Virus record (IMG/VR): IMGVR_UViG_3300027770_000026
Span: 124,001 to 188,000 of that record
Strand: one strand, 5' to 3'
Length of the DNA stretch: 64,000 nt
The notes beneath the pieces were generated by a model that saw only the letters and a program-made list of their open reading frames with translations, did no database searches and was not told where the DNA came from. Positions 5,992 through 29,402 of the stretch are shown here, in pieces; the stretch's first letter is position 1; each line of letters opens with the position of its first letter. A program made the translations under genes and the position numbers.

Positions 5992-7752
5992 CTATTTGAG
6001 CCCCAAGCCGTTGCGTGTGGCTTGGTAAAGTGTTTGGCCTTTTACTTTCAGTTTTGAGTTCACACCTGTTAATTGGAAGAAGCGTTTTTCATCACCGGCT
6101 GCTGCAGCTTCACGTGCCTTACTGCCGCTAATACCTTCTACGCCCTTGCTGTCTGGATCACGTTCGCCGCTGCTGGCAAAGTTTAGCACCACATGTTCGC
6201 GTCCTTTTGGACCACGAGCAAAGTCTGTAGTACGCACCAGACCACTGTTCCAACTGTTGAGTAGTTTTTCGATACTCTTTGGTCCCGCACCAATTCGATC
6301 CGATCCACCCACAAAGGTCATGTTACGATAACCCTGTTCGTATAGATAGTTGGCTGCGTCAATTGGTGTTTTGAATGCGCCCGATATAATATTCCCTGCG
6401 TATGCTGGATAGATCTGTTTGATAAATTCTGCTTTGGTTTGTGGATCCAACGGATTCTCATCATTATCAACAGTACTGCTGAGGAATATAAATGCCTTAT
6501 CACCACCTGCTTCCACAGTAGTTTGCATCAATTGCTTGTGTCCAAGTGTTGGTGGATTCATTCTACCAAAGCAAAATACTGCTTTGGGCATGGTGCTCTT
6601 GGTTGCAATCTCTTCCGGAGACACTGCAAACTTGGCGCGCAATGCTCGTGTAAAACCTAATCGGTCTACCAACTTGACATTACCACCACCAAATACATAG
6701 CCTTCATGTCCGGCGTCGCCGTTGATCTCAGCATGCACTGCGCTGTTCTTTACCTGCTTGTCTACTTGTTGTTTAACATGTAGCTTGAGATCTGTGAGTA
6801 CAGCCCACATTTCCCACAATGCTTCAAGACCTTTGGCTCCATCTTTTTGATATAGCCAACCGTCTTTGTTTTCGCCCAGCAGTTTCTTTGCTGCCGCAGG
6901 GCTTAGTTGTACTTGGAGATAATCCATAAAGCGAGGCACAATGCGAGAGCTTACATCATTCTCGTCAATCATTTGTGAAATAAACTTGCTCATTGCGGTA
7001 AGCACAGTCTTGGCCTTCATGCCTGCAAGGTCATTGATAAACTTGTTAACAGTGTCTGTATTACTTGCAACTGTACGTTTGGCTGCGGACAACTGTTGCT
7101 TGCCGATTGTAACCTTAGGTGTGTCCTTCATCTCACCCGTAAAGAACACAATGCCTGCACCTTCGCGTAACCCTTGTAATCCACGTAGAGGAATACTAGC
7201 CGATGTTAAGCTAGGGAAGAATGTGTGTACAGCAATACCGCCGTTGCTACGAGCAATGTCCTTACCAAGTGGAGTTTCCACTCCCACAGAGTATTTTACT
7301 GTGCGTGGCTGGAATACGTATTCGCCATTCTTTGTGTCTGGTTTTCCATACCACATGAGGTCGCCAAACCAATACTGGTCTGCTTTCTTAGGTACAATCT
7401 TTTCTAGCAAAGGGCGTATTGCGTCCTCTGCTTCCCATAATTCTACACGTTGAGCGCCACGTGGTTCGTCATATGCACGTATGGTACTAAACTCTGCTTG
7501 GCCTTTGGCTACTTTAGCAAATTGATAATGGTCAACAAATACTACCTTACCTGCAGCATCACGACCAAATACAATGCCTACACTGCCGTCCCATTTAATG
7601 GACAGTTCTTGCGGATTGGCTTCTAGATTAACTAATGCTTCTAACGCTCGCTTGCCACCATCGGGTTCTGTGACCCAGTCCTCGATGTGAGCTGTACCTG
7701 CTTCAAGCAGCGTACGCTTTGCTTTATGCTGCAATACTTCAAATATTTTCAT
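5992..7752 (-). CDS. fusion: ligase-type nucleotidyltransferase domain (KWDG; DUF6267-like) plus HxGH cytidylyltransferase-like domain
   Basis: SIKWDG, GHEGYV and KLVDR motifs, then FGRMNPPTLGH, GGSDR and ISGSKAR. Likely start MKIFEV at 7752. Confidence 0.75.
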   Translation of the reverse strand: MKIFEVLQHKAKRTLLEAGTAHIEDWVTEPDGGKRALEALVNLEANPQELSIKWDGSVGIVFGRDAAGKVVFVDHYQFAKVAKGQAEFSTIRAYDEPRGAQRVELWEAEDAIRPLLEKIVPKKADQYWFGDLMWYGKPDTKNGEYVFQPRTVKYSVGVETPLGKDIARSNGGIAVHTFFPSLTSASIPLRGLQGLREGAGIVFFTGEMKDTPKVTIGKQQLSAAKRTVASNTDTVNKFINDLAGMKAKTVLTAMSKFISQMIDENDVSSRIVPRFMDYLQVQLSPAAAKKLLGENKDGWLYQKDGAKGLEALWEMWAVLTDLKLHVKQQVDKQVKNSAVHAEINGDAGHEGYVFGGGNVKLVDRLGFTRALRAKFAVSPEEIATKSTMPKAVFCFGRMNPPTLGHKQLMQTTVEAGGDKAFIFLSSTVDNDENPLDPQTKAEFIKQIYPAYAGNIISGAFKTPIDAANYLYEQGYRNMTFVGGSDRIGAGPKSIEKLLNSWNSGLVRTTDFARGPKGREHVVLNFASSGERDPDSKGVEGISGSKAREAAAAGDEKRFFQLTGVNSKLKVKGQTLYQATRNGLGLK

Positions 7753-7756
7753 GCTG

Positions 7757-8551
7757 TTACTTACTGTGTGGGAATAGATGCTTGACTGCGTTCCACTTCT
7801 TAGGAACAACTTTCAGCACACGTTCCAAACCTGAGATACTGGATATGTCGCGACCATTCGCATGTGTGCCCACCATAAGTTTAGCAACGCCATCCTTATC
7901 TGCCCAACTAACTAAGACTCTGCCAGTTTCACGATCTACTACGCCCTTGTCTGGACTTAGCTGTAGCGCACTGTTTGGCTTTCCCTTGGCGTCAACAATT
8001 TCTGTCTTGCCGCTAACGGGACTAGGTGTCATCTTGATCAGTGTGGGCCATATTTCTAACCAAAGGTCTCCGCCGCGCATAGTAGGATCAGTGGAGTAGT
8101 CCATCTGATGTCCTTTAATTGCAATGGCTGCATCAGGTTTAACAATTAGGTCCACTTGTGCAAACTTGTCTTGATCAAATCTCACAACACAGTTAAGTGA
8201 CGCTCCGTTGTTTTTGATACCTTTCTCAGTAAGAGCTTGTGCCAACTTCTGCTTGCTACCTTTAAGGTCCTTATCGGAAAATGCACTTAGTACATCTTTT
8301 TCATCTAGCATGATGTCAATGTCGCCAGAATCTTTTTTACGATTGTTTGGGTCGTAGTATGGATGTGTTTCATCCCATATGCCCGCGCCGCCCATAGTCC
8401 AGTCGGCATGCTTGACGCCCACTGCAAGTAGTATCTTAGACAACTTGTCTTTGATTTCTTTAAAGTCTTTTTTAGTGACCCGTGTGACAGATACGCCCAT
8501 CTTCTCAGCGGCCTTCTGACTCATCTCTTGCAGTAGTTCTTGTATCTTCAT
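7757..8551 (-). CDS. Pol-beta-superfamily nucleotidyltransferase-like protein
   Basis: GGAG...DSGDIDI and QVDL motifs. Confidence 0.7.
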   Translation of the reverse strand: MKIQELLQEMSQKAAEKMGVSVTRVTKKDFKEIKDKLSKILLAVGVKHADWTMGGAGIWDETHPYYDPNNRKKDSGDIDIMLDEKDVLSAFSDKDLKGSKQKLAQALTEKGIKNNGASLNCVVRFDQDKFAQVDLIVKPDAAIAIKGHQMDYSTDPTMRGGDLWLEIWPTLIKMTPSPVSGKTEIVDAKGKPNSALQLSPDKGVVDRETGRVLVSWADKDGVAKLMVGTHANGRDISSISGLERVLKVVPKKWNAVKHLFPHSK

Positions 8552-8554
8552 GCG

Positions 8555-10756
8555 TTACTCTGCTCGTGCTTTGAGATGCTTGAGGCTCTTGATTGCGTCA
8601 CGTGCCATTGTGTCCTTTACTGCAGGCTTTTGCTTGTCATGCTTTTCTAAGAAGTTCTTGATAACTGTCATTGATACGTAGTGAGATGTCCCATCTTCAA
8701 AACGTACTTTATGATTACCATCTACGTCCTTAGCTTTACGTAGTTGCATTACAATGTGTGGGATCTTGTCATCATCCGCATCATCTTCTTTATCGTCATC
8801 CTTTGCTTCGTGCAATGGATCATCTTCGTAGAAGTCGTTAGGTGAACGATGGCCATGATGTTCTGTTGAACCACGAACCATTTCGTACTCAACATAATCC
8901 TTAACACGATTGATATAGTCGGCTGCCAGAGTAATCTTGGCCTGTACCCAACCTTCTAGCTCGCCCATACTGTCAAGCATGTTGTGCAAGTCACTTGCGT
9001 TCTTTACCATCTGGTACAGTTGTGACTGTGCCATTTGAACTTCATGATCATCTCTCACATCTAGCATGACCTGATGACCTTCTTTTATAACTTTGGCTTT
9101 TTTCTTTCTAGACTCTTGTACTGGCTGCTCAGGTTGTGCAGTTTCGTCACCGGGTGCAGGTAGTGCAGCAGGTGCTGGTTCCTCTGCTGGCATTTCTTCT
9201 GTATCATCTGCAGCATCCTTTGCTGCACTAATTGCTTCCTTCATGCCCAACGGATCCGTAACCCATGCTCCTAGCAACTTGCGATAAGAAATACCTGACT
9301 CTTCTGATACTTCGTGAATTGCATCGTACTGCTTGTCTAGATCATAGTCTCCGCCTAGTTTTTCGTGAATATCCGATAGTGCAGACTTAACTTCACTTTC
9401 GTCTTCGCCACGTTGCTCGCGGTCTTCTCTGGTTATGATCTGAGTAAATGGAATTGCACCTGCTGGGGTAATAATTATTTTCTTTTTTGTATCAACCTGA
9501 ATTGGGCCTGGTTTGAATTTTTGCTGACCACCTGCACCTGGCATTTGCCCTGGTTTCTGCTGCATCTGCTGTTGTTGCGCTTGTTGTGGTTGTTGCTGTT
9601 GTCCTGGCGCTGGCTGCTGTTGACTTGCCATACCTTGACCAAAAGAACCAACTGCTTGTCCAGCAACATTTGCACCTTTGACTACTGCATTACTTGCCAT
9701 ATTGCCTGCAGCTTGTGCGCCTTTGACTACTGCATTACTTGCCATATTACCTGCAGCTTGTGCGCCTTTAGCTACTACGTTACCTGCAGCTTGTGCGCCT
9801 TTAGCTACTACGTTACCTACAGCTTGTGCTCCTTTTACTGCAGCAGTGCCCAAAGCCTTTGCACCCTGTACTACTGCGCCACCAACACGGGCAGCACCTG
9901 TAGCTAATGCTCCAGCGCCTGCAGCTAATGCTGGAAGAATTTCATCTATTTGTTCTTCGCCCATGTACACTTCGGGTTCGTTGTTGGGCTTCTTACCTGG
10001 CTTTGGCTTCGGCTTTGGCTTCGGCTTTGGCTTCAACACTCCAAATGGATCAGTGTCTTGCTTTGGTTCAACAATTGGTGATAAACTTTTATCTTTTGGA
10101 TCTATTGGTTTACGTATTAGTACTTCGTGAATACTCAAAGGTTGAAATGCCTTACTGAACCATTCGCGTACTGCTGATTCATCCATACCAGCACTCAGAC
10201 GAACACGAGCCGGTACGTTCTTAGCATAAGCAGAATCGTATATAACGCTCCACTCCTCAGATACCATTTCCTTATTATCGCATTCGCACGGCATTGCTTC
10301 ACACACTGGGCAAGCATCCTCGCCTTCTTTTACTTGATAGTTCTTGCCATCTACCTTGAATGACTTCTTGTGTTGCATCTTAGCAGCAGCAAGTGCGCCA
10401 CTAAACTCGTTGCCTTCTTCCATGTCATCTTCGTCAACTAGGTTTTCGGCAATACGTGTCTCTTCGTCGTGTGCGCCTTTTGCAGAATTTAATTCATCTG
10501 CAAAGTCTGCAAATCCGTTCTTTTTAGAAAGGCTATCAAACCCGCTCTTCACTTCATCATGACTTACTCCACGCATGCCGCCAGCGACCCGTGCAGTAAC
10601 CTTATCGGGAGTAGCAGTAGGCTCGGGGCGACTTAATACATCTGAGTGTATTGTTTTTAGTGCGCCTTCAACGTCTTCAGTAATCATACCTTTTTCTTTA
10701 GTGGACGGTGTATTAATTACCGATAGCCATTTCTTCATGTTTTCTTGAGTTGTCAT
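8555..10756 (-). CDS. modular low-complexity protein, probable internal head/ejection protein
   Basis: 733 aa made of short modules separated by hydrophobic-x-E sites. CPVC..PCEC motif, PK, Q-rich and Gly/Ala repeats. Lies in a late operon. Confidence 0.7.
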   Translation of the reverse strand: MTTQENMKKWLSVINTPSTKEKGMITEDVEGALKTIHSDVLSRPEPTATPDKVTARVAGGMRGVSHDEVKSGFDSLSKKNGFADFADELNSAKGAHDEETRIAENLVDEDDMEEGNEFSGALAAAKMQHKKSFKVDGKNYQVKEGEDACPVCEAMPCECDNKEMVSEEWSVIYDSAYAKNVPARVRLSAGMDESAVREWFSKAFQPLSIHEVLIRKPIDPKDKSLSPIVEPKQDTDPFGVLKPKPKPKPKPKPGKKPNNEPEVYMGEEQIDEILPALAAGAGALATGAARVGGAVVQGAKALGTAAVKGAQAVGNVVAKGAQAAGNVVAKGAQAAGNMASNAVVKGAQAAGNMASNAVVKGANVAGQAVGSFGQGMASQQQPAPGQQQQPQQAQQQQMQQKPGQMPGAGGQQKFKPGPIQVDTKKKIIITPAGAIPFTQIITREDREQRGEDESEVKSALSDIHEKLGGDYDLDKQYDAIHEVSEESGISYRKLLGAWVTDPLGMKEAISAAKDAADDTEEMPAEEPAPAALPAPGDETAQPEQPVQESRKKKAKVIKEGHQVMLDVRDDHEVQMAQSQLYQMVKNASDLHNMLDSMGELEGWVQAKITLAADYINRVKDYVEYEMVRGSTEHHGHRSPNDFYEDDPLHEAKDDDKEDDADDDKIPHIVMQLRKAKDVDGNHKVRFEDGTSHYVSMTVIKNFLEKHDKQKPAVKDTMARDAIKSLKHLKARAE
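9676..9831. repeat. coding tandem repeats (2x45 nt plus 2x33 nt; KGAQAAGN units)
   Basis: Units start at 9676, 9721, 9766 and 9799. Confidence 0.9.
9999..10034. repeat. 12-nt tandem repeat x3 (GGCTTTGGCTTC; encodes KP repeats)
   Basis: Direct observation. Confidence 0.9.
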
Positions 10757-10770: not shown

Positions 10771-11217
10771 TTATCTTGTCTTTAGTGTGCTGCGTAGGAA
10801 CCATGCATGCTTCTTGTGCGCTTCCATTCTGTCAGCGAGGAAGTTGCTGAGTGCATGTTCCTTGTTAGTTTCTGCTAGATCATATGATGCTTGCAGAGAA
10901 TTTAGTATTACTTCGTTTTCTGCAAGTAGACCACTTGCCATTTCAAGTGCGTTTGGAATCTTGCTGCTTTCTTGCACTTGACTGAGCTGCTTAAATCGCT
11001 CTAGTGTTCCTGGTGCGTAGCTTTGTAGCTGACGAATATGCTCGGCAAATGGGTCAACAGATCCTTGTACTTCCGAATAAATTTCTTCAAACAATTTGTG
11101 AAATTCGTAAAAGTCCGCTCCTTCTACGTTCCAGTGATATCCCCAGGCCTTAACATAGAACACAAATGTGTTTGAAAATGCAATCTTAAGTTGCTGAATT
11201 AGTTCGTCCATATACAA
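10771..11217 (-). CDS. dps: Dps/ferritin-like protein
   Basis: YHWNVEG.DF.EFHKLFEE.Y, D..AEHIR and HKKHAWFL signatures. Confidence 0.92.
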   Translation of the reverse strand: MYMDELIQQLKIAFSNTFVFYVKAWGYHWNVEGADFYEFHKLFEEIYSEVQGSVDPFAEHIRQLQSYAPGTLERFKQLSQVQESSKIPNALEMASGLLAENEVILNSLQASYDLAETNKEHALSNFLADRMEAHKKHAWFLRSTLKTR

Positions 11218-11875: not shown

Positions 11876-12442
11876 TTAATTTAGCTGGTTGATACAGCGT
11901 ACTATATTTTTTGCCCAGTTACTGGCTTTTTCTGCTAGTTCCCGATCGGATTCAATCTTCTTACCATCCTGGATGGTGCTTTCTAGCATACTCTTAGGTG
12001 GCGCTGTGAAACCCAGATAGCTAGCAAATGCGTTATGTATACCGTGTATGTGTTGGAAGCCGTCACTACTACCGCTTACTATGGTAGCAAATACTTTCTT
12101 AGCCATTGGGTTAATTTTGTGTTCGTTAGCCCAATCGTCAAAGTTGTCCATGCGCTCGATAAAGCTTTGGGCTAAACTGCTATGCACACCCCACCAAATT
12201 GGGGTAGCAATAACAACAGCGTCCATATCAATTACACTTTTGAGTAATGCCGTCATATCATCTGCACTGCCGTCGTCTGCTGCAAAGTTTGTGCTAAAGT
12301 CGTAAGTCATGCCTTTGAGCGACCGTACTACAACATCGGCGCCTTCGCGTTCCAGTGCTTGTTTAGCCACGCGACACAGTACTCGTGTGTTGCTGGGTTT
12401 GTTTACAGCTTTTAAGCTGGCTTCTACTATTAATATACGCAT
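11876..12442 (-). CDS. flavodoxin-like NAD(P)H-dependent FMN reductase family protein
   Basis: S...SNT FMN-phosphate loop, D.VVIATPIWWG, FIERMD. Confidence 0.85.
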   Translation of the reverse strand: MRILIVEASLKAVNKPSNTRVLCRVAKQALEREGADVVVRSLKGMTYDFSTNFAADDGSADDMTALLKSVIDMDAVVIATPIWWGVHSSLAQSFIERMDNFDDWANEHKINPMAKKVFATIVSGSSDGFQHIHGIHNAFASYLGFTAPPKSMLESTIQDGKKIESDRELAEKASNWAKNIVRCINQLN

Positions 12443-12465
12443 GTGAGTATTTATTGATCTTTAAT

Positions 12466-17012: not shown

Positions 17013-20000
17013 TTACCAGTTGTCTACAATACTAGGACCGCTCAGAATCCAACGATTAGTGTCAACCTTTAGCAGTGTATAAATTTCTGTATTGCCCCCG
17101 CTACCGCCACTAATTCTCCAGTCGTTATGATTGCCACCTTCGCCACCAAAGTTGTAACTGTAGCCCGCGGCGTTAATTATTAATCCGTTGGACACGTCGC
17201 CGTCCGTATTAACGTAGATATAACCGTTATTAAAATTATCTACTACCAAGCTAACTGTGTAGCCAATTGGCAATTGAGTTGCTGAATTGTTAGGAACAAC
17301 TAGTGTACTCCCACTTTCACCGCCACTGTAGTAGATAAACTGACCGTTGTGGCTAGCGTTTAGCGTATTGCTCTGATTACCTGGATCAGTAAATGCTCTT
17401 CTAACGCCAGCAAAGTCTGCGTTTGATGTCAGTCTACCCAGTAGGAAGATGCTTACTTCTTCAGTTGGTGTTTGTGTGGTAACATTGGGAGTAGCAGTGC
17501 TGCTTGTCTTTCTAGCATCGTAAACGGTTGGGGTATACCCGCTTATGGACAAACTACCTGCAAGCCATTGATAATCACCAGCTGACCATACATTACCACT
17601 AGTATCAAGTTGTACAACTAACGCACCGAGGGTGCCGGAAAACACACCGCCGCCAATTGCTATGTATCCGTTTTTAACAGCAATATTACTTCCTGAATTA
17701 TACTGCCAGTTGGCACTACCAGTATCTGAATTATTAGTAAGTATTCTTTGCCATACTACATTACCCGCTTCATCAAATTTACCAGCAAACATGCTGGTAG
17801 ATGACGGGTCAACAGTGCCTGACATGTATAGATAGTTGTCATCGCCAACTACTATGCTGCAAGTAATATCATCGCAAGTACCGTCTACTATCTGTGTCCA
17901 CAGTTTATTACCGTTGATGTCAAACTTTGACAAGTACATGGAACTGCCACTAAATCCGCCGTATGTGCCGCAAACATAAACATTACCGTATTGGTCTATG
18001 TCAGCATCTGCACCACTGCAGTTACTTCCTGATGATCGGTTAAGTATGAACTTCTGCCACAACAAGGTGCCATTGGATTGATACTTGGCAACTATTGTGC
18101 CAGCGTCTGCACCCGATACTGCACCAACTTTAACCACCATATCGTCGTCAGGACTGAGAACACCAAATGATGTTCCTAAAATAGTTGTAACTGTGTTGCC
18201 TACAGTCCAATCTCCGGTAGCATCTGCACTAACTGTAAACGTAGGTATACCCACTGTGTCCACTGTATAATTAAAAGTTACACCGCCAGCAGTTACTGTA
18301 CCGCTTGCATTAGCCCATCTAATATTTTGTGCTGACTCAGCATATAGCGCAGTGACTTCGTTTGTGAAATTACCAATGTTAGCAGCATATCCAACAACTA
18401 CTATTTCACTGCTTGGGCCCACGCCCATACCGTAAGCTTCGTCGTTTTGTTGACCGTCCAGCGTCTTTGACCAAGTAACTGTACCATCTGCAGGATTAAT
18501 TTTGGCAGTGACTATACTATTATCAGTGCCGTTATCCACAAAGCCTACCATTATGGGATTACCACTAGTGTCTACGTCTACTACCCAACCTATGCCAATA
18601 TCACCGTAATCGTAGCTCTTAGACCATACAACTACTCCGGTAGTTTGATTGATCTTTGTCAAGACTGGGTACGGACCGGTAGTACTGATGGAGCCAGCAA
18701 CGTAGACGAATCCATTTGCGTTATCTACTGCTAATCCCCAACCATTGGTATAGGTTTCAATAGTAAATTTCATACTCCACACTTGTGTACCGTTGGCAGT
18801 AAACCGAGCAAGACTAGTGTATGAAGAAGTAGTGGTATCAATTTGGTGTTTAAACAACGCAAAAATGTCGCCGTTAGTAGCGTACTCTGTGCTAGTGGCT
18901 ACAACAGGAACATCGTGATATGTATATGTGCTGAAGTCCTGCACCCACTGATTAGTTTTCTCTCCTGCCCATGCTGTTGTTTGTACTGTAGCATCTGGGA
19001 ATGTCAAACTACCATCTGGGTTAAACACCCATTGATTGGTATGGGATTGTCCGGTATATACATTTACAGCGCCATCGTCACCGGTTGCTGGATAATATTC
19101 TTCTCTGTACCCAGCACGGATGTTAACATCGCCGCCTTGGCCAATATTTGAGCCTGGGTTTGAATCGTTAATGTAATCAACAGTGCAGTTACCAGCGGTG
19201 ATATCAATAAACCCACCGTTGCCTTGATCGGAATATCCACCCTCAATGCGAACGTATCCGCCGGCTCCTGTGCCCTGACCTTGACCGCCACGTAGTTTAA
19301 TGTCGCCACCGCTTCCGCCGGCATAGACACCGTTAGTAAGTACGCCTTCACCGCCGGTGCCGCCCCAAAGGTAAACGTCGCCGCCTTCGCCTGGGTTTGG
19401 TGATAACCAATCACTGTCGTCTGTGTTATCAAATCCCTTACGTCCTTGAATGACGATGCGTCGAGCAGCAGGATAATCAACGGTAGGTTTGGGTCCTGTG
19501 ATAATAACTTGGTTAGCTGGATCATTACTGATCTGTAGTGTTCTACCTTCCAACCCGTAATTGTTACGATAACCTACTTGCGACATAATTGGCGGTGTTA
19601 AACTACCGTCCGCATCAAATGTCCATGTACTGGATCTTGCTGTTAAGGGTACATAATCATTTTGCCAACCTCCTCCCACTGTGACTGCTGTAGCTATCAG
19701 TGATGCAGATGTAATTGTTAGTGCGGGATTGGTTACTGTGGTTGTAGCTGTTATATCAACAAGTGTTAGATCATGATCAGCAAAAGTAAAAGTAAAGGAA
19801 GAATTTGATATAGTAAGCTCATCAGAGCCGCCACTTGCAAACGTTCCCGTCAATTCGCCATCTAGTGGATATTGTACAGTGAGATTTTTATTATTTCCGT
19901 CAATTGTTATTGCAAAAGAAATAGTAATATATTTTCCGGTAGGATCAACAATGCTATCACTACTGCTATTGTCGCCGTAACCTGCTCCAAATGCTAAGTC

Positions 20001-21863
20001 GTTTGGAGACGAAAAAGTTCTTGACCACACACAGTCTCCAGTTAGCACATCTAACTTGAGTAGTACGATCTCGTTGTTTGATGACGTGGAATGTTCTGCT
20101 GTAAGATAAACAAATCCCGCATGATAAACCAGACCTGTTCCGCGTAGGTTATATGCATGAGATATTTTCTTTTGCCAACGGCTGACACCTACATTATTAA
20201 TGTTAGTTGATGCAACTATAATATAGTCTGGAGGAGTATCGTTGCCGTTGATTACAACATAGAGATTTCCACTAGGATCTTTGCAAATGTCTTCGCCACG
20301 TAAATTACTTGTGGTGTAGTTAGTGCCAATTCCGTACAAGGCAGTGGTCAGCGAGGGCGGCGCGAACGTTACGGTTCCCAGAATACATTTATAATAGTTA
20401 CTCTGTGCATAGTAACTGCCCACTGCAGCATAAAATACGCTATCATTATTAACTATGGACTTAAAATAACCATCATTATCTATGTCATCTGGTGCGAACA
20501 CGGCTACCAGTGGGGATTGTATATTATTAAAATCTATACCAGCAATCATTGGTCCTTCAAACTGGCCAGAAATAGCAGCAGAATCGGTGCTTGCGTCTGC
20601 TTCTATATCGGTTATTTTTACATCGGCAATTCTAAGTGGGGCTCTTGGTGTTCCTGTCAGGTCAACTAAGTTACCGTCGGTATCCATAGTACCAATATAA
20701 CTTATAATGTCAAGCCATGCATAGCTAGCCACAGCAATTGACTCGTAGGTTGACACTGTAGCTGGCATATAACGCATGCTAGCGTTATAGCTGCCACATG
20801 GCATTCCCGCATTATCAGTCCATGTCTTGCGCCATATTAGTGTGCCGTTGGGGCTATATTTTAAGTATAGGTGATTGCCTTCGCTGTAATCATTGCTAAC
20901 TGTGCTACCTAATACATACGTATAGCCCGCAGCGTCGTATGTAACACTGCCGTTGATAATGAATGAAGGGTCTATCTGTGCAAAATCACCAAATATGTTG
21001 TACCACGGACGACGATCTTCTGCTGTTATTGTGGTTTCAAGTTGAGCTTGAATGTCCACACTACCCGTGTGATCAACCTTTACAAACTTATCGTCGTCAC
21101 CTAGGAACACATCGTAATTTAGATTGTCGCCACTGTCGATGTGCAAGTGACTGTAGTTTTCGTTTGTGCCGCCGCGTACGGTAATATATTTGTTAGCAAC
21201 AAAATCTGTATTGGTTAAGCTGAATTTTACACCATCAACTGAGTTGTCACTGAGTATAGCGCCACTATTTGGTACTGTTAAATTACCGTTAGTGTCAAAT
21301 GTCCATTCTGTGCCGTCTGCCGAAACAATTATACTGCCATCAGATACCGGAATGTCTACACTACTGGTACCATTGAAAATACTTGATTCGCTGCCACCGC
21401 CAATATTCTCAATTGCATTTGGACGCATCTTAGGACGGAATGGGATTTGTGCCCAGTCGCCCGTTACCCAACTTGTAAACATGTTAGGATATGTGTCTGT
21501 GCCAATATACGCATACATGTTAGTTGATTCGTTAGCGGTTGACTGTACAGAAGTATAAGCTGTTCCCGCAGTCACTACATCAATACTGTCAATATGGCCA
21601 TCGTTGTCAATCTCAGGTACTTCGTATGTAGCTAAATTGCTTGGGGTATCGCCATTGTCATAGATATTGTAATTAACTGCGTCGATGACTACCGGAGGCA
21701 CATCAAATATGCGAGACTGATTGCCTGCTTCGTTTACTTCGTCTGCCGAGTATGTGGATGCTTGTGTAACTCCAGGAATGACTATTGTAGTCTCGCCTGC
21801 TTGCAGATCTACTCCGCCTACACGCAGTGTTGAGCTTTGAATTTCAAATGGTTTATTTGCCAT
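17013..21863 (-). CDS. large modular fibre/adhesin protein (beta-propeller-like regions and Gly-rich beta-helix repeats)
   Basis: 1616 aa with K....G...W.K repeats, GGDV.I.(A/G)G repeats and WTFD..G.LT.P linkers. Confidence 0.75.
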   Translation of the reverse strand: MANKPFEIQSSTLRVGGVDLQAGETTIVIPGVTQASTYSADEVNEAGNQSRIFDVPPVVIDAVNYNIYDNGDTPSNLATYEVPEIDNDGHIDSIDVVTAGTAYTSVQSTANESTNMYAYIGTDTYPNMFTSWVTGDWAQIPFRPKMRPNAIENIGGGSESSIFNGTSSVDIPVSDGSIIVSADGTEWTFDTNGNLTVPNSGAILSDNSVDGVKFSLTNTDFVANKYITVRGGTNENYSHLHIDSGDNLNYDVFLGDDDKFVKVDHTGSVDIQAQLETTITAEDRRPWYNIFGDFAQIDPSFIINGSVTYDAAGYTYVLGSTVSNDYSEGNHLYLKYSPNGTLIWRKTWTDNAGMPCGSYNASMRYMPATVSTYESIAVASYAWLDIISYIGTMDTDGNLVDLTGTPRAPLRIADVKITDIEADASTDSAAISGQFEGPMIAGIDFNNIQSPLVAVFAPDDIDNDGYFKSIVNNDSVFYAAVGSYYAQSNYYKCILGTVTFAPPSLTTALYGIGTNYTTSNLRGEDICKDPSGNLYVVINGNDTPPDYIIVASTNINNVGVSRWQKKISHAYNLRGTGLVYHAGFVYLTAEHSTSSNNEIVLLKLDVLTGDCVWSRTFSSPNDLAFGAGYGDNSSSDSIVDPTGKYITISFAITIDGNNKNLTVQYPLDGELTGTFASGGSDELTISNSSFTFTFADHDLTLVDITATTTVTNPALTITSASLIATAVTVGGGWQNDYVPLTARSSTWTFDADGSLTPPIMSQVGYRNNYGLEGRTLQISNDPANQVIITGPKPTVDYPAARRIVIQGRKGFDNTDDSDWLSPNPGEGGDVYLWGGTGGEGVLTNGVYAGGSGGDIKLRGGQGQGTGAGGYVRIEGGYSDQGNGGFIDITAGNCTVDYINDSNPGSNIGQGGDVNIRAGYREEYYPATGDDGAVNVYTGQSHTNQWVFNPDGSLTFPDATVQTTAWAGEKTNQWVQDFSTYTYHDVPVVATSTEYATNGDIFALFKHQIDTTTSSYTSLARFTANGTQVWSMKFTIETYTNGWGLAVDNANGFVYVAGSISTTGPYPVLTKINQTTGVVVWSKSYDYGDIGIGWVVDVDTSGNPIMVGFVDNGTDNSIVTAKINPADGTVTWSKTLDGQQNDEAYGMGVGPSSEIVVVGYAANIGNFTNEVTALYAESAQNIRWANASGTVTAGGVTFNYTVDTVGIPTFTVSADATGDWTVGNTVTTILGTSFGVLSPDDDMVVKVGAVSGADAGTIVAKYQSNGTLLWQKFILNRSSGSNCSGADADIDQYGNVYVCGTYGGFSGSSMYLSKFDINGNKLWTQIVDGTCDDITCSIVVGDDNYLYMSGTVDPSSTSMFAGKFDEAGNVVWQRILTNNSDTGSANWQYNSGSNIAVKNGYIAIGGGVFSGTLGALVVQLDTSGNVWSAGDYQWLAGSLSISGYTPTVYDARKTSSTATPNVTTQTPTEEVSIFLLGRLTSNADFAGVRRAFTDPGNQSNTLNASHNGQFIYYSGGESGSTLVVPNNSATQLPIGYTVSLVVDNFNNGYIYVNTDGDVSNGLIINAAGYSYNFGGEGGNHNDWRISGGSGGNTEIYTLLKVDTNRWILSGPSIVDNW

Positions 21864-23926: not shown

Positions 23927-24094
23927 TTAATTTTTGCGTTCACGCAACAATCGTTGATATCTTGCTGCGGCCCACGTTAAACTAGCACTACTAGGGTGTG
24001 CTTGGAATTTTTCCGCAGCTTCCTGCAGAGCTTGTTGTTTAAGTGATTTGTTTGTATCATTTAAACGATGCGAAAACATTTCCTGCAACTTCAT
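23927..24094 (-). CDS. 55-aa protein MKLQEMFSHRLND... (below ORF-track cutoff)
   Basis: ATG overlaps the upstream stop (TAATG). The ORF fills the gap exactly and has an MKLQE N-terminus. Confidence 0.7.
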   Translation of the reverse strand: MKLQEMFSHRLNDTNKSLKQQALQEAAEKFQAHPSSASLTWAAARYQRLLRERKN

Positions 24095-25719
24095 TAGTAA
24101 CTTCTTCCTGTTATCTTTTTGCCCAATGCGCCAATTGGATCGCTCAGTACATCGATTACATCGTGTACCTTGCTTAGTTTTTGTTGATAAGTTTGCCCAA
24201 CGTCAGCTATATCTGCTTTGAATTTTTGAAATCCAGTTAGAGGTTGATCGTCACCTCTGTCGTGCGATCGGCGGCCGTATACTTCGTCGGGACTGCCTTC
24301 AGCTTTAGCTAATACTGCATAATTCACATTTCCGTCGATAGGAAAGTGATGTACTAACCACCAAAACTTATGCTGTTCCACTGTGGAGTTGAATCCGTAA
24401 GTTCCGTCCTGGCGATCAATTACAATAGGCGGGGTTAGTTTGTTACTTTCTAACTTGTACTTAAATGCCTTTACTTCGTCTTTGGGTATGGTTGCAACCA
24501 GTCTGGACAAATCTTTGTTTAGTCCCAAACGGCGTAGCATACCATCTGTTATCTGCACTCGCTTACCTGGACCTTGTGCTAGTTTTGACGGCTTCTTTTC
24601 TGGTTCTTGTGCTGCTTGCGGTGCTGCTTGCGGACGTTGCGGCTGTGGTGCTGCTTGTGGCGCAGGTTGGGGGCGCGGTGGCTGCTGTGGAGCAGCAGGC
24701 GCTTCTGTTAAGTCAACAGAATTAATCCAGTTAACACATTCTGCAACACTCTTGTCCACAGCATTATCCACCGTATGCTCGCCTAGTATGCGTTCAATCA
24801 AAGGTAGCATTGCTGCAACACTTTCGGGAATAGTACTGAAATATGTGCCTAGATTAGTAACGGGCTCTACATATGTTTCCGCAAGATTCTGTGTGTATGC
24901 TTTGTAACCACGCGAACCATTCATTAGCTTGAGGTCTCTGCGGCAGTTAACTTGCTTTTCCTTAAGCAGCTTTAGCAGGGGAACAGTTTTGTTTTCGCAA
25001 ATCTTTTGTGAACGAATTTCGCTTACAAACTTCTTAATGGTGCACAATGTATTTGTAGTTTCTAATATACGCTGTCCCACACGGTCATTCCAATTACCAC
25101 CTTCATCCATGTGGCGTGCCATTGCACGACATCCTGCTAGGTTGACAAATGGAAAGCGAAATCTTTCGCCCTGATTGTTTTCAATGAATAATGCACGAAT
25201 GTTACGACTGCGAGCGCCGTGAACATCGTCGTTAATAATGTCCGCATGCTTGACTTTGATGCGAACATTTTCTAATGCTTGATAGCTACTACGCTTAGTA
25301 CCCGACAATGGAGCAAAGCGACTTTCAGACATTGATTCTTTTGACTGCTTGTCTTGAATTAGGGACTTAATGTCCTTAACTGTCATACCTGACTTGTCTA
25401 GGTCAACTAGATCAAACCCTAGCTGACGGGGTACAGTGTATGCACGTAGGTCACCAACAAACTTAAACCAACGCTTCTTGTCGTTGTTAGCAAACGTATT
25501 GGTTATATTTCTGTTGAAATAAATCTTAAGGTCTGTGGGCTCCATCAGACTGAGAGTAACCATAGTTTCTTTGTCGTTCTGATTAAACAACATGTTGAAA
25601 ATTCTAGCATCGCGAGGGACTAGCGTTGACATGCCCTTCTCGTCAATCATAGTAATGGTTTCAAACCTGTTGCGAATCTTATTAAACAATTCTTCGCAGT
25701 GTTTGTTAGTTAAGTTCAT
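24094..25719 (-). CDS. conserved phage structural/head-associated protein
   Basis: 541 aa with RSRNI..LFIEN..GERF.FP...L.G.RAMARH motif and a P/Q/A linker. Late promoter at 25725-25730. Confidence 0.7.
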   Translation of the reverse strand: MNLTNKHCEELFNKIRNRFETITMIDEKGMSTLVPRDARIFNMLFNQNDKETMVTLSLMEPTDLKIYFNRNITNTFANNDKKRWFKFVGDLRAYTVPRQLGFDLVDLDKSGMTVKDIKSLIQDKQSKESMSESRFAPLSGTKRSSYQALENVRIKVKHADIINDDVHGARSRNIRALFIENNQGERFRFPFVNLAGCRAMARHMDEGGNWNDRVGQRILETTNTLCTIKKFVSEIRSQKICENKTVPLLKLLKEKQVNCRRDLKLMNGSRGYKAYTQNLAETYVEPVTNLGTYFSTIPESVAAMLPLIERILGEHTVDNAVDKSVAECVNWINSVDLTEAPAAPQQPPRPQPAPQAAPQPQRPQAAPQAAQEPEKKPSKLAQGPGKRVQITDGMLRRLGLNKDLSRLVATIPKDEVKAFKYKLESNKLTPPIVIDRQDGTYGFNSTVEQHKFWWLVHHFPIDGNVNYAVLAKAEGSPDEVYGRRSHDRGDDQPLTGFQKFKADIADVGQTYQQKLSKVHDVIDVLSDPIGALGKKITGRSY

Positions 25720-27351: not shown

Positions 27352-27933
27352 TTATAGATTATGATAAAACTCTTCACCATCAATTTCTAGATCGTTATTA
27401 TATCTTACCGTTATTTCAATGGCAGGAGTATTCATGTGCATACTGTGAAAGATTACCGTAGGAACAACTATTATAATTGTTTCGCCTGTTGAGTTATTTT
27501 TCCACAAGCTTTCCATATTAGCATTATTTTTTTTATCTTTTAAACGTTTCCAGCTAGTAGTGGAAATTAATTTATCAAATAATGATTGCAACGTTATTTC
27601 GGCAATTTCGTCGTCTTCCGGTGGGGGAGTTTTACTGCGCTGTAACGCATCTTGTGCTGCTTGTTTCTTAGCACGGAATGCGCCAAGGTCAACTACATCA
27701 CCTTCACGCAAGGTAGATTTAATCTTTAGTAAGGTCCAACTAGCATCTGCGTCGCTAGCAAACATACGCATTGCATCATCTATATGCATGGCTACGATGT
27801 TGTAAGACTTACTTACATATTGCTCTGCATCTTCCCGAGACATGGGTAGTGGGTCAATGCTACGGTAAGCCTTGTCAGGATTATGAACCACAACATAATC
27901 GCGTGGTTCACCTCTCGTTCCTGAATTAATTAC
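27352..27933 (-). CDS. -1 frame extension of the 490-aa protein (or stand-alone GTG-start ORF 27352-27891)
   Basis: Frame is open from 27951 across the upstream stop. No ATG until codon 17 of the GTG ORF, and the GTG at 27891 lies within a predicted stem. Confidence 0.65.
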   Translation of the reverse strand, partial: VINSGTRGEPRDYVVVHNPDKAYRSIDPLPMSREDAEQYVSKSYNIVAMHIDDAMRMFASDADASWTLLKIKSTLREGDVVDLGAFRAKKQAAQDALQRSKTPPPEDDEIAEITLQSLFDKLISTTSWKRLKDKKNNANMESLWKNNSTGETIIIVVPTVIFHSMHMNTPAIEITVRYNNDLEIDGEEFYHNL

Positions 27934-27942: not shown

Positions 27943-29402
27943 GAGCCTTCTTTAATTTTGTCAGCTATCTTGTGTGCTTTGGTAATTGTGCTTTTTTCCA
28001 ATGGTGGCTTGTCGCCTGTTGCTTTCATTGCAGCAGCCATCCCAATTGCATACTTGTTCTTAGCTTTCTTTTTCTTAGCTTCGTTTACACTTTCCGTAGC
28101 TTGTCTTCTCAACAATGCAGGTGTTCTTTCGTCATGCGGACCGTAGTATCCTGCTTCTTCGGCTTCTTTGCTACCTTTGTATTCCTTTGGTGCTGGCTCA
28201 TCTATTTCATCTTCTACATTTGATGCAGTCATGCTTAAAGAATATTTGTCCAACAATTCTAATGCAGCATCGTCATGTCGACGATTGCCGGTATTGTCAT
28301 ACGCTAACTTGTGTTGTGCATAACGCTTCATGTCGGCTGCTGCTTCTGGACCGTGTGCATCGGTTACTGCAATGACAACCTGCAGTGCTTCGTGTTTAGC
28401 TCTTGCACGGGCCTCTGAATCTTCCTGAGCATCCTTCTCTGTGCCGTAGTGACGTGCATAACGATTCCACATGTCTCTGAGAGAAAGTTCTTCGCCTTCT
28501 TGTTCGGCAACTGGCATAGGACGACCGCGTCCATGTGTGCCGTGCGATAGCTTTTCAGGATGCGCTGCTGGCCCCATGCCTGCACGTTGTGCTGCTGGTA
28601 CATCTAAGGCTGCTAGTTTGTCTGGGCTAAATCTGTTGTCTCTGCTGAGATCTAGACTTACTCCTCTACCCTTACCCGGACCTGTATCACCTACCAGATG
28701 CTTCATGTCACTAAATGCTTCCTGCACTACATAAACAGGCGATTGTGTCATCACACGGTTTTCAATTACGGGATACACTTTGATGAATCCGTCCTGATTA
28801 CGAACTGCGTATTCACGCGAGCCGTCAATGAACGATTTTGCACCTTCGCTAATTGCACGACCCACAGCACTCATGTCTAGTTCATCTGCATAGTGCTGAA
28901 TCTTAGTTGCTTTCCATTCCTGCATGAGACGATCTTCCATGAGATCGTCTTCTGACTTGGGAAGTGGATTATCGCCGTGACCTGCCTTTGTTACCTTATT
29001 AGGAGTACTAGCTGTGTGGTCAGTGTTAACAATGTCCAACAAGTTCTTCATGGTCTTAGGCTTTGGTGCATTTGCTAATGCTTCTTCTACTTGCTCTTCC
29101 ATTACTGCACCGCATGATGCTTCTTCTGCGTGCTCGTATTCCGGTAATGCACCAAGTCCCGACTTCTGCATGATTGCTCGCATTGCACCCGATGGTAGTT
29201 CCTGTGCCGCCACCTTTACTACAGGAGCTGCAACAGGCTCTTCATGAGCATGCGCTGGGCTCATGCCCGACAGCTTTTGAAGTATTGCAATCAGTTCGTT
29301 TGGATCTTCACTACGTATTGTAGTATTTTGCATTACACCATCTCCACTTGGGTCGCTCTCATTGGAGCGTGTGTCGATGTTTAAATTGTATTTTGTTGGC
29401 AT
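27930..29402 (-). CDS. modular low-complexity protein, probable internal head/core protein
   Basis: 490 aa, GAGGA RBS, many hydrophobic-x-E sites, C-terminal basic module NKYAIGMAAA. Confidence 0.75.
   Translation of the reverse strand: MPTKYNLNIDTRSNESDPSGDGVMQNTTIRSEDPNELIAILQKLSGMSPAHAHEEPVAAPVVKVAAQELPSGAMRAIMQKSGLGALPEYEHAEEASCGAVMEEQVEEALANAPKPKTMKNLLDIVNTDHTASTPNKVTKAGHGDNPLPKSEDDLMEDRLMQEWKATKIQHYADELDMSAVGRAISEGAKSFIDGSREYAVRNQDGFIKVYPVIENRVMTQSPVYVVQEAFSDMKHLVGDTGPGKGRGVSLDLSRDNRFSPDKLAALDVPAAQRAGMGPAAHPEKLSHGTHGRGRPMPVAEQEGEELSLRDMWNRYARHYGTEKDAQEDSEARARAKHEALQVVIAVTDAHGPEAAADMKRYAQHKLAYDNTGNRRHDDAALELLDKYSLSMTASNVEDEIDEPAPKEYKGSKEAEEAGYYGPHDERTPALLRRQATESVNEAKKKKAKNKYAIGMAAAMKATGDKPPLEKSTITKAHKIADKIKEGSKKK

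What the first reader, a model, noticed from the sequence alone, without database searches (positions are those of the whole stretch)
8555..10756. 733-aa 'string-of-beads' protein: candidate protease-processed polyprotein
Seen: short distinct modules separated by hydrophobic-x-E sites (ITE, IAE, MEE, VKE, VSE, MDE, IDE, MKE, VQE, IKE, LHE). Modules include CPVC..PCEC, a KP repeat, a Q-rich tract and a helical DHEVQMA...W...KIT.A.DY unit. Known: T4-type prohead proteases cut after (I/L/V)xE. Inference: a precursor releasing several small peptides or scaffold pieces inside the capsid. The 490-aa protein (27930-29402) is built the same way.
Basis: partly seen in the sequence, partly recalled or inferred. 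Interest (0 to 1): 0.6.

Follow-up and report, generated by a model that had tools for sequence, protein, structure and literature searches.

The report
Mosaic phage protein with protease-site joints
This 733-residue jumbo-phage protein is a chain of small, widely shuffled mini-domains joined at sequences that look like cutting sites of the phage's own T4-type head protease, so it is probably a precursor cut into many small pieces inside the capsid, although no cutting has been shown.

Summary
The window comes from a 266-kb uncultivated jumbo myovirus that encodes a T4-type (S77) prohead protease, a scaffold and a capsid protein rich in hydrophobic-x-Glu sites.

The protein is a true string of beads. 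At least four of its modules recur in hundreds of other viral proteins, at any position and in varying copy number. One module (P0001 115-144) was found in 205 distinct contexts. It is preceded by Glu in all 205 and ends in hydrophobic-x-Glu in 187.

Mosaic proteins show a spacing-specific excess of this motif. They also have conserved N-terminal leaders like the T4 capsid-targeting sequence. All eight module-bearing viral records that are at least 60% complete encode the S77 protease.

A cyanophage protein family of the same network (T4-GC119) and a homologue of a neighbouring gene were detected in purified S-SM1 virions.

Against the idea: the gene lies among non-structural genes, and cleavage and packaging are untested. 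The 490-aa protein belongs to the same network through one shared mobile module.

The parts
8555..10756 (-). Whole ORF P0001, 733 aa, a mosaic 'string-of-beads' protein
   Evidence: Full-length homologues P0003-P0006, aligned. AlphaFold gives mean pLDDT 45, with 540 of 733 residues below 50.
10676..10756 (-). Residues 1-27: N-terminal leader (x4-6-NMKKWLS...) ending in ITE27|D; candidate capsid-targeting propeptide
   Evidence: Conserved in P0003-P0005, always ending M(I/L)TE. From Met7 it has the same layout as the T4 IPI leader: MK-x-aromatic, then a T/P/S-rich stretch, then ITE|. Leaders of the same type (N-I/M-Y-x-I-L..) head many other mosaic proteins.
10445..10675 (-). Residues 28-104: helical module A, ending RIAE104
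   Evidence: pLDDT is about 80 for residues 50-95. In P0005 this module is missing exactly between LTE| and the acidic leader of the next module.
10325..10444 (-). Residues 105-144: acidic leader (VDEDDMEE|) plus the 30-aa 'GNEF...GKxYxVKE|' mobile module
   Evidence: 217 representative clusters at E <= 1e-3 in the search with P0001:1-275, nearly all through this module, and at least 303 IMG/VR loci. In 205 unique contexts, Glu precedes the Gly in 205/205, P3 is M/V/I/F in 157/205, and the end is phi-x-E in 187/205. Invariant columns.
10256..10324 (-). Residues 145-167: Cys-x2-Cys...Pro-Cys-x-Cys knuckle, ending MVSEE167|W
   Evidence: Conserved in P0003-P0005. The same knuckle often follows the GNEF module in unrelated proteins.
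10124..10255 (-). Residues 168-211: beta-hairpin plus helix module (WSVIYDS...REWF...IHE211)
   Evidence: Also found in P0023, P0027, P0030, P0031 and P0034 at other positions. Secondary structure.
9941..10123 (-). Residues 212-272: Pro/Lys-rich spacer with (KP)n, ending EEQIDE272|
   Evidence: Sub-threshold TonB_N polyproline match (26.1 bits against a cut-off of 33). 6-nt x 6 DNA repeat. The EEQ(I/L)DE joint recurs in P0003, P0008 and many mosaic proteins.
9641..9940 (-). Residues 273-372: Ala/Gly-rich repeats (glycine-zipper-like amphipathic helix)
   Evidence: 45-nt x 2.6 (90%) and 33-nt x 2.7 (96%) tandem DNA repeats. The module start is shared with P0008. Proteins retrieved through this low-complexity stretch (P0007, P0009, P0010) carry Gly-zipper Pfam matches.
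9512..9640 (-). Residues 373-415: Gln/Pro-rich tract
   Evidence: variable in length among homologues.
9206..9511 (-). Residues 416-517: small beta unit plus helical bundle
   Evidence: pLDDT is 74-87 for residues 450-510. Conserved in P0003-P0006. No named relatives.
9080..9205 (-). Residues 518-559: acidic/Pro linker ending VQE548 and VIKE559|G
   Evidence: The phi-x-E directly upstream of the helical module is kept in all homologues.
8807..9079 (-). Residues 560-650: helical-hairpin mobile module (DHEV..W.Q.KIT.AADY) and tail ending LHE650|AKD
   Evidence: At least 270 IMG/VR loci, in ORFs of 86-948 aa at any position, including stand-alone ORFs of 86-107 aa. Found in cyanophages S-SM2, S-WAM2 and S-RIM8. 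phi-x-E lies in the N-boundary window in 60/81 copies, against 41% of random windows. The Atlas shows stand-alone viral clusters of 68-95 aa.
8558..8806 (-). Residues 651-733: C-terminal mobile module (..HIVMQLRKAKD..)
   Evidence: Absent from P0003-P0006. The same module ends the L013 and L054 proteins and lies inside the L006 protein (residues 476-540 of 632; BLASTP E 1e-4).
12448..12454 (-). T4-late-promoter-like ATAAATA, 12 nt upstream of the first gene of the co-directional gene string that contains P0001
   Evidence: There are 37 copies in the genome, and 26 lie within 60 nt upstream of an ORF start. No minus-strand terminator-like site lies between here and 5992.
7757..8551 (-). 264-aa downstream partner; it starts 4 nt after the P0001 stop and has the N-terminus MKIQELLQE|M
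   Evidence: The same partner follows P0004 and a GNEF-module protein in L172.
5992..7809 (-). 605-aa DUF6267 plus cytidyltransferase protein; its C-terminal domain is homologous to a virion-detected cyanophage protein
   Evidence: Pfam and PHROG matches. 32% identity and E 2e-23 to S-SM1 T4-GC190, which was detected in S-SM1 virions (PMC3037559).
27930..29402 (-).
   Evidence: Homologues aligned.
27948..28061 (-). P0002 residues 448-485: mobile 'YAIGMAAAMK...KAHKIA' module, flanked by VNE|A and IKE|G
   Evidence: About 90% identical in hundreds of proteins. It occurs together with the P0001-type helical module in P0255, P0243 and S-RIM8 gp114. phi-x-E lies upstream in 90% and downstream in 67% of copies, against 31% of random windows.

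Best explanation
P0001 is a mosaic cargo precursor of a T4-type jumbo phage. It is one translation product made of about ten small, independently mobile modules of 25-100 aa.

Inferred steps: a short N-terminal leader takes it into the assembling prohead core. There the phage's S77 (T4 gp21-type) protease cuts after Glu at the conserved hydrophobic-x-Glu joints, at about residues 27, 104, 114, 144, 167, 211, 272, 548/559 and 650. This frees a set of mini-proteins and peptides that stay with the DNA, are ejected, or leave the head.

Shown here: the modular anatomy, the mobility of the modules, the conserved motif at the joints, the presence of the protease, and the virus-only distribution.

Inferred only: targeting to the capsid, the cleavage itself, and what the freed pieces do.
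For: (1) The genome has Peptidase_S77 (1.2e-26). Next to it lie a 363-aa scaffold with 22 [ILVM]xE sites, the densest in the genome, and a capsid protein whose N-terminus holds LLE7, LLE20, MLE35 and IAE43|S.

(2) The modules are mobile. The helical module is in at least 270 viral loci, the GNEF module in at least 303, and the P0002 module in hundreds. They occur at any position and in 1-3 copies.

(3) Joints carry the motif. For the GNEF module, Glu precedes it in 205/205 contexts and phi-x-E ends it in 187/205. For the helical module the figure is 74% against 41% random. For the Y module it is 90% and 67% against 31%. Within the family, P0005 lacks module A exactly between two such sites and duplicates the GNEF unit.

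(4) The excess is spacing-specific. In 122 mosaic ORFs, phi-x-E has observed/expected 1.49, against 1.22 in 1657 control ORFs from the same loci. phi-E (0.84) and phi-xx-E (0.78) are depleted, and phi-x-D and phi-x-K are not raised.

(5) All 8 module-bearing viral records that are at least 60% complete encode S77. The GNEF module occurs once in 185,579 prokaryote genomes, on a 5.6-kb phage-like contig.

(6) The leaders resemble the T4 CTS. T4 ipII/ipIII start MKTYQEFIAE|A and ipI starts MKTF..TP..ITE|A. Small helical-module ORFs start MK(T/S)(F/Y)KQLREE| (14/103 mosaic N-termini against 30/1444 controls). P0001 from Met7 reads MKKW..TP..ITE|.

(7) Published proteomics: T4-GC119 was detected in S-SM1 virions with 13 peptides, and so was the cytidyltransferase T4-GC190 (PMC3037559). 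T4-GC119 is the mosaic family whose S-SM2 and S-RIM8 members carry P0001/P0002-type modules. The window's 605-aa gene, in the same gene string as P0001, is homologous to GC190.

(8) A late-promoter-like motif heads the gene string.

(9) The T4 gp21 I/LxE specificity and the CTS rules come from PMC12991175 and PMC9026906.
Against: Nothing here demonstrates cleavage or presence in the virion.

P0001 sits in a conserved neighbourhood of non-structural genes: FMN reductase, Dps/ferritin, the 264-aa ORF, DUF6267-cytidyltransferase and, further on, RecA. It is about 80 kb from the head module.

The overall site count is only moderately above the genome background.

The conserved Glu residues at module edges could be structural caps or parts of acidic linkers.

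The S-SM1 protein that was detected in virions lacks the specific modules of P0001 and P0002.

Two related Pfam modules (DUF5824, DUF5661) also occur in phages that are not T4-like: a 32-kb Pelagibacter phage and a Chaseviridae phage.

The S77 association has no matched control for how common S77 is among large aquatic phage contigs.

The similarity of the leaders to the CTS is short and was partly defined after seeing the data.
Confidence: 0.5

Rival explanations
1. It is an uncleaved multivalent hub. The protein works full length in the infected cell as a flexible scaffold whose mini-domains each bind a partner, for instance in DNA/RNA repair or replication with its neighbours. The hydrophobic-x-Glu at module edges would be a helix or strand cap plus acidic linker, not a protease site.
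For: The conserved neighbourhood is non-structural. About 74% of residues are predicted disordered or of low confidence, and Q-rich and Ala/Gly-rich tracts are typical of hub or condensate proteins. The acidic stretch before the GNEF module is itself conserved as if it were part of the module.
Against: This does not explain several results: why phi-x-E but not phi-E or phi-xx-E is enriched; why three unrelated modules all end in the same motif; why stand-alone and N-terminal forms carry CTS-like leaders; or why related proteins are found in virions.
Confidence: 0.25
2. It is an envelope-spanning ejection protein used whole. The (KP)n spacer acts as a rigid TonB-like periplasmic rod, and the Ala/Gly-rich glycine-zipper segment inserts into the host membrane during DNA delivery. 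The other modules would be accessory.
For: TonB_N polyproline similarity. Glycine-zipper matches in P0007, P0009 and P0010, which were retrieved with P0001 through low-complexity similarity. Ejection proteins with membrane segments are known in giant phages (PMC5694885).
Against: The TonB match is below the cut-off and is a composition match. These two segments are the least conserved parts and vary by recent tandem duplication. There is no TonB C-terminal domain. This rival is compatible with, rather than exclusive of, processing.
Confidence: 0.1
3. It is cut by the prohead protease, but outside the capsid. One version is a cytoplasmic polyprotein matured late in infection. Another is a sacrificial substrate that soaks up free protease activity, which host immunity can sense.
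For: T4 gp21 activity is sensed by cytoplasmic CBASS enzymes through an LPE loop, so the protease can act on non-capsid substrates (PMC12991175). P0001 lies outside the head module, yet a late-type promoter heads its gene string.
Against: This is purely conceptual, with no data on it. CTS-like leaders and virion detection of related proteins favour the capsid route.
Confidence: 0.08
4. It is a chance or artefactual ORF, or a mis-assembly of low-complexity sequence.
For: There are internal tandem DNA repeats and low-complexity tracts.
Against: Full-length homologues at 48-56% identity keep the same gene order in independent assemblies. Coding density and strand also fit a real gene.
Confidence: 0.01

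Closest known systems
T4 internal proteins IPI, IPII, IPIII and Alt: CTS-led cargo trimmed by prohead protease gp21
   Same: The phage has the same protease family (S77). Both have a short N-terminal leader ending in hydrophobic-x-Glu, and the P0001 leader is laid out like that of IPI. The cargo is diverse and fast-evolving (PMC9026906, PMC3012670).
   Different: T4 IPs are single small proteins cut once or twice. P0001 would be cut about nine times into many unrelated mini-modules. It has no sequence homology to any IP. Packaging is not shown.
T4 prohead core proteins gp22, gp67 and gp68, cleaved to internal peptides
   Same: Multiple phi-x-E sites in one chain, with small peptide products. 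The window's own genome has such a scaffold with 22 sites.
   Different: P0001 is not in the head gene cluster and is not coiled-coil throughout. It consists of modules that are mobile between unrelated proteins.
phiKZ / 201phi2-1 / SPN3US inner-body and ejection proteins processed at (S/A/G)-x-Glu
   Same: A giant-phage head cargo is matured by a T4-related protease after Glu, and long propeptides carry several sites (PMC5694885).
   Different: The P3 preference differs: here it is hydrophobic, and [STGA]xE is not enriched. There is no homology. The known cases remove propeptides rather than dissecting a chain of modules.
Polyvalent proteins of phages and conjugative elements (Iyer et al. 2017, PMC5512222)
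   Same: Many unrelated domains lie in one polypeptide, architectures are combinatorial, and these proteins are predicted to be packaged and delivered, sometimes after processing.
   Different: Polyvalent proteins are built from recognisable enzymatic conflict domains and often carry their own peptidase. P0001 has no Pfam domain, its beads are 25-100 aa, and the proposed cutter is the separately encoded prohead protease.
Cyanophage T4-GC119 / PHROG 727 proteins of the hyperplastic g16-g17 region (S-SM1 115, S-SM2 109, S-RIM8 gp114)
   Same: These are also strings of shuffled small modules of very variable length (276-2985 nt). The S-SM2 member carries the P0001-type helical module, and S-RIM8 gp114 carries both that module and the P0002-type module. 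They lie next to the terminase, like P0002. The family was detected in S-SM1 virions.
   Different: P0001 and P0002 do not match PHROG 727 and share only single modules with it. The S-SM1 member that was detected lacks those modules.

Membership tests
Substrates of T4-type (S77) prohead protease / CTS-bearing head cargo | The phage encodes a Peptidase_S77 (gp21-type) prohead protease | tested here: met
   PF03420 hit at 1.2e-26, above the cut-off, at G000 C1:214675-215106; scaffold and MCP are adjacent.
Substrates of T4-type (S77) prohead protease / CTS-bearing head cargo | Cleavage motif (I/L and other hydrophobic residues)-x-Glu at exposed positions | tested here: met
   21 sites are present. 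Those at 27, 104, 114, 144, 167, 211, 272, 559 and 650 are conserved at block edges and lie in low-pLDDT linkers. This shows presence of the motif only, not cleavage.
Substrates of T4-type (S77) prohead protease / CTS-bearing head cargo | N-terminal capsid-targeting sequence | tested here: inconclusive
   The leader resembles T4 IPI in layout, and a class of leaders is shared by mosaic proteins. The similarity is short, and targeting was not tested.
Substrates of T4-type (S77) prohead protease / CTS-bearing head cargo | Protein or its fragments present in proheads or virions; Glu-terminated fragments | not testable with these tools
   The only evidence is by association: T4-GC119 and GC190 in S-SM1 virions (PMC3037559).
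Polyvalent proteins (Iyer et al. 2017) | Two to 15 distinct domains in one polypeptide with combinatorial architectures | tested here: met
   About 10 modules, of which at least 4 were found in other architectures.
Polyvalent proteins (Iyer et al. 2017) | Domains drawn from the known conflict repertoire (MPTase, ART, ParB-like, methylase, anti-restriction and others) | tested here: not met
   No Pfam, PHROG or PDB match for any module.
Prohead scaffold (T4 gp22-like) | Encoded between the protease and the major capsid protein; long coiled coil | tested here: not met
   The scaffold is the 363-aa ORF at C1:215250-216341. P0001 lies about 80 kb away and is mostly non-helical linker.
TonB | TonB_N above the Pfam cut-off, plus a C-terminal TonB domain | tested here: not met
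   26.1 bits against a cut-off of 33; only the polyproline part matches; no C-terminal domain.
PHROG 727 / T4-GC119 cyanophage mosaic family | Match to the family profile | tested here: not met
   P0001 and P0002 have no PHROG hits, while S-SM1 115, S-RIM8 gp114 and S-SM2 109 match at 1e-152 to 1e-208. Only single modules are shared.

The most novel reading that the evidence does not exclude
T4-type aquatic and jumbo phages run a combinatorial 'mini-protein cassette' system. Dozens of families of 25-100-aa modules are strung together as polyproteins with standard protease-site joints and a capsid-targeting leader. The prohead protease frees them inside the head, and they are injected with the DNA as a variable set of host-takeover or anti-defence peptides. 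Because the joints are standard, recombination can swap modules freely. This would explain the hundreds of architectures seen.
Probability: 0.25. Interest if true: 0.8.

Novelty: new variant of a known kind. Interest (0 to 1): 0.62.

Why it matters
If the joints are real cleavage sites, one gene would deliver many packaged mini-proteins. That extends the T4 'internal protein' idea to a polyprotein format, and to a very large, uncharacterised and virus-only pool of modules in marine and freshwater T4-like and jumbo phages.

It would give a rule for annotating hundreds of 'hypothetical' mosaic ORFs: a leader, then modules, then phi-x-Glu joints.

It would also explain the hyperplastic g16-g17 region of cyanophages as a cargo locus. 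And it would offer natural tags and joints for loading foreign peptides into T4-type capsids.

The idea can be tested directly in cultured cyanophages that carry the same modules.

Tried and rejected
- Pfam and PHROG scans of P0001, P0002 and single modules gave nothing above cut-off.
- PDB sequence searches with P0001 and with the GNEF profile gave nothing meaningful.
- blastn and tblastn against cultured phages found no full-length relative and no GNEF module. Only the helical module turned up, in a few cyanophages.
- Direct comparison of P0001 with P0002 showed no significant similarity.
- The window's 179-aa ORF against S-SM1 T4-GC403 showed no similarity, so that apparent synteny is not homology.
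- The whole-protein motif count as the main argument was set aside, because the genome-wide background is already 1.18 and P0001 ranks only about 18th.
- The BLAST-end breakpoint test gave only a modest signal (0.34 against 0.24, and 0.31 against 0.23). It was replaced by the anchored module analysis.
- AlphaFold with a 7-row alignment gave mean pLDDT 45, too poor for fold searches, so none were run.
- Atlas look-ups gave only viral 'hypothetical' clusters.
- Complex prediction with the protease plus the GNEF joint segment returned 'no answer' (score 0.00). This is not evidence either way.
- Scaffold and TonB readings were rejected (see membership tests).
- No literature was found on DUF5824, DUF5661, DUF6321 or DUF6267.
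Full report
**Context.**
The window is bases 124001-188000 of a 265,892-bp IMG/VR viral record estimated to be 80% complete. It is a jumbo myovirus. Its large terminase is 55% identical to that of Pseudomonas phage PA5oct and 48-52% identical to those of Atu_ph07 and Phosso. A tail sheath, tube proteins and other virion proteins lie in the window.

Outside the window the genome has a T4-type head module: portal, Peptidase_S77 protease (PF03420, 1.2e-26), a 363-aa scaffold and a 396-aa major capsid protein. The scaffold carries 22 [ILVM]-x-Glu sites, 6.1 per 100 aa, the densest in the genome. The capsid protein's N-terminus has LLE7, LLE20, MLE35 and IAE43 followed by Ser. The T4 specificity (I/L-x-E, with weaker xxE sites influenced by secondary structure) is cited from PMC12991175.

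**The observation.**
The ORF 8555-10756 (minus strand) is intact and encodes 733 aa (P0001). All listed motifs are present.

By count alone the signal is weak. There are 21 [ILVM]xE sites against 11.7 in shuffles (p about 0.004). But the genome-wide observed/expected ratio is 1.18, and P0001 (1.79) is about 18th among the longer ORFs.

AlphaFold with the few available homologues gives mean pLDDT 45. Only two segments are confident (about 50-95 and 450-510), and small helix or hairpin elements are scattered through low-confidence linkers. This fits beads on a string.

**Homologues and anatomy.**
Four full-length relatives (P0003-P0006, 41-56% identity over the aligned parts) come from independent assemblies. 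They keep the same gene order: FMN reductase, a 206-212-aa ORF, ferritin/Dps, the P0001 homologue, a 264-aa ORF, a DUF6267 protein and, further on, RecA.

Their alignment shows conserved blocks separated by variable linkers. Hydrophobic-x-Glu is conserved at block edges:
- M(I/L)TE at about residue 27
- R(I/V)(A/S)E at 104
- DMEE at 114
- VKE at 144
- (S/A)EE at 167
- IHE at 211
- EEQ(I/L)DE at 272
- phi-x-E directly before the helical module, at 559

LHE650 precedes a C-terminal module that only P0001 has.

P0005 lacks module A exactly between the first two sites and has the next module twice. P0006 swaps the N-terminal part for zinc-ribbon-like units.

**The modules are mobile.**
The helical module (about 560-630) occurs in at least 270 IMG/VR loci. 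The ORFs range from 86 to 948 aa, the module sits at any position, and stand-alone forms of 86-107 aa exist. It also occurs in cyanophages S-SM2, S-WAM2, S-H9-1 and S-RIM8.

An exhaustive search with residues 1-275 found 217 representative clusters, nearly all sharing one 30-aa unit (P0001 115-144, 'GNEF...GKxYxVKE'). That unit is present 1-3 times per protein in proteins of 94-1165 aa, and in at least 303 IMG/VR loci. In 185,579 prokaryote genomes it occurs once, on a 5.6-kb phage-like contig.

The C-terminal module of P0001 recurs at the C-terminus of two other mosaic proteins (L013, L054) and internally in a third (L006). The module at 168-211 recurs in five other clusters.

**Joints.**
Anchoring on the conserved cores gives the following:
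- GNEF unit, 205 distinct contexts: Glu immediately precedes the unit in 205. The residue two before that Glu is M, V, I or F in 157. The unit ends in hydrophobic-x-Glu in 187. The boundary Glu residues and the Val at P3 of the distal site are invariant profile columns.
- Helical module: hydrophobic-x-Glu lies in the 22-aa window where homology begins in 60 of 81 contexts, against 41% of random windows. The following residue is usually N, A, G or S.
- P0002-type module: 90% upstream and 67% downstream, against 31% random.

Across 122 mosaic ORFs and 1657 control ORFs from the same loci, phi-x-E has observed/expected 1.49 against 1.22. phi-E (0.84) and phi-xx-E (0.78) are depleted in the mosaics, and phi-x-D and phi-x-K are not raised. 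So the excess is specific for the spacing the protease reads. A cruder test on BLAST alignment ends points the same way.

These counts include related sequences. They are descriptive, not independent trials.

**Link to the protease and the capsid.**
All eight module-bearing viral records that are at least 60% complete encode S77. The misses are fragments of 42% completeness or less. No matched control for the base rate of S77 was possible.

The T4 genome gives the capsid-targeting leaders MKTYQEFIAE|A (ipII, ipIII) and MKTF..TTTP..ITE|A (ipI). In T4, residues 4 and 7 of the CTS direct targeting and residues 8 and 10 direct processing (PMC9026906).

Small cyanophage-type ORFs with the helical module start MK(T/S)(F/Y)KQLREE followed by Cys. 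A T4-CTS-like head pattern is found in 14 of 103 distinct mosaic N-termini against 30 of 1444 controls. Other mosaic proteins share two or three further leader types, each ending in hydrophobic-x-Glu. P0001's own leader (x4-6, then N-M-K-K-W-L-S.., ending ITE27) belongs to one of them. From Met7 it has the IPI layout.

**Published proteomics.**
Sullivan et al. 2010 (PMC3037559) detected T4-GC119 in purified S-SM1 virions with 13 peptides. They also detected the 'citidylyltransferase' T4-GC190.

T4-GC119 is the length-hypervariable family (276-2985 nt) in the g16-g17 hyperplastic region. Its S-SM2 member holds the P0001-type helical module. S-RIM8 gp114, in the same PHROG 727, holds both the P0001-type and the P0002-type modules. 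The S-SM1 member itself lacks these two modules, so this is evidence by association.

The window's 605-aa protein lies two genes downstream of P0001 on the same strand. It is homologous to GC190 (32% identity, E 2e-23). The S-SM1 protein begins MKKFSAFLNE|A, which matches the T4 CTS in length and key positions. Cytidyltransferase domains are also fused to mosaic modules elsewhere (the L061 ORF, HTVC008M, PHROG 3041).

**Expression.**
ATAAATA, the core of the T4 late promoter, occurs 37 times in the genome, and 26 copies lie within 60 nt upstream of an ORF start, including several structural genes. One copy lies 12 nt upstream of the FMN reductase gene. No minus-strand terminator-like site lies between there and the end of the 605-aa gene. 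P0001 is therefore probably late, like head genes. This is inference.

**The second protein.**
P0002 (27930-29402) has no direct similarity to P0001. Its C-terminal 38-aa module is about 90% identical in hundreds of proteins. That module is combined with the helical module in P0255, P0243 and S-RIM8 gp114.

P0002 lies between neck/head-completion genes and the terminase, the same kind of position as the cyanophage family. Its own homologues show conserved blocks with variable inserts but fewer obvious joints. 'Built the same way' is therefore right at the level of the network, and less so in detail.

**Weighing.**
The anatomy, the mobility, the motif at the joints, the virus-only distribution and the presence of the protease are shown. 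Targeting, cleavage and the roles of the pieces are inferred.

The main counter-evidence is the non-structural neighbourhood, the lack of any direct observation, and the possibility that the edge Glu residues are structural. Related Pfam modules (DUF5824, DUF5661) also occur in phages that are not T4-like, although in one of these the module is fused to a DUF2213 head protein.

I put the processed-cargo reading at about 0.5 and an uncleaved hub at about 0.25. The remaining weight goes to a membrane-active ejection protein or extra-capsid cleavage.

**Comparison.**
It works like T4 internal proteins and core proteins: a leader, the S77 protease, and a cut after Glu. It also works like the polyvalent proteins of Iyer et al. 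(PMC5512222). It is a member of neither by homology.

I found no description of such module strings, or of these modules, in the searched literature.

Noticed in passing
whole genome G000; in the window e.g. 7757-8551 (-): 18 of 315 ORFs, otherwise unrelated, start with M-(R/K)-(I/L)-x-(E)-(I/L/F), and most have Glu again at position 7-10 (MRIHELTE, MKIQELLQE, MRIREILRE...). The pattern is about 11 times more frequent at N-termini than at internal Met. It recurs in a related contig (L172: MRFYELTQ, MKINEIVQ, MRLSQLTQ). It looks like a shared N-terminal signal reminiscent of the T4 capsid-targeting sequence.
   Followed up: partly
window 12448-12454 (-), 32820-32826 (-), 38628-38634 (-), 39911-39917 (+), 49609-49615 (-): ATAAATA (TATAAATA in the strongest copies) behaves like a T4-type late promoter. 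There are 37 copies in 266 kb and 26 lie within 60 nt upstream of ORF starts. This is fewer copies than base composition predicts, and they are concentrated before genes.
   Followed up: partly
window 5992-7809 (-): The 605-aa protein fuses DUF6267 to a cytidyltransferase-like domain. The DUF6267 part contains a K-W-D-G stretch that looks like motif I of ATP-dependent ligases; this is my reading and was not tested. The listed TTG start is probably too early: a Met 19 codons in begins MKIFEVLQ. The domain is homologous to a protein found in S-SM1 virions.
   Followed up: partly
window 7757-8551 (-); L085 9439-10233; L172 818-1675: A 264-285-aa ORF with a G-x-G/S...D-I-D stretch always follows the mosaic gene, even when the mosaic gene itself is different. 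The stretch suggests a polymerase-beta-type nucleotidyltransferase, but there is no Pfam hit.
   Followed up: no
window 50390-64000 (-): A giant ORF of more than 4,500 aa runs off the end of the window. A 1616-aa ORF (17013-21863) and a 680-aa ORF have no PHROG match.
   Followed up: no
window 9670-9835 and 9998-10034: There are near-perfect tandem DNA repeats inside P0001: 45 nt x 2.6 at 90%, 33 nt x 2.7 at 96%, and 6 nt x 6. The Ala/Gly-rich and KP segments are therefore recent expansions and differ among homologues.
   Followed up: yes
window 24094-25719 (-): The 541-aa virion structural protein (PHROG 13484) has relatives of about 700 aa (P0012, P0013, P0017). Their extra C-terminal parts share low-complexity sequence with P0001. 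Its own phi-x-E ratio is 2.08.
   Followed up: no
P0003-P0006 C-termini; window 27930-27947 (P0002 C-terminus): Both protein families end in a short poly-Lys tail directly after a hydrophobic-x-Glu..IFE-D-R-x-I-x-KKKK in one and ..IKE-GSKKK in the other.
   Followed up: no
L168 (Vibrio phage vB_VpaM_VPs20) 3377-4645: A DUF5661-like module of the same network is fused to a DUF2213 head protein in a 54-kb Chaseviridae phage. So at least one module is tied to head assembly outside the T4-like group.
   Followed up: no
window 10771-11217, 11876-12442 (-): A Dps/ferritin-like protein and an NADPH-dependent FMN reductase are encoded just upstream of P0001. They are conserved there in related phages, which is an unusual pair for a phage gene string with a late-type promoter.
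   Followed up: no
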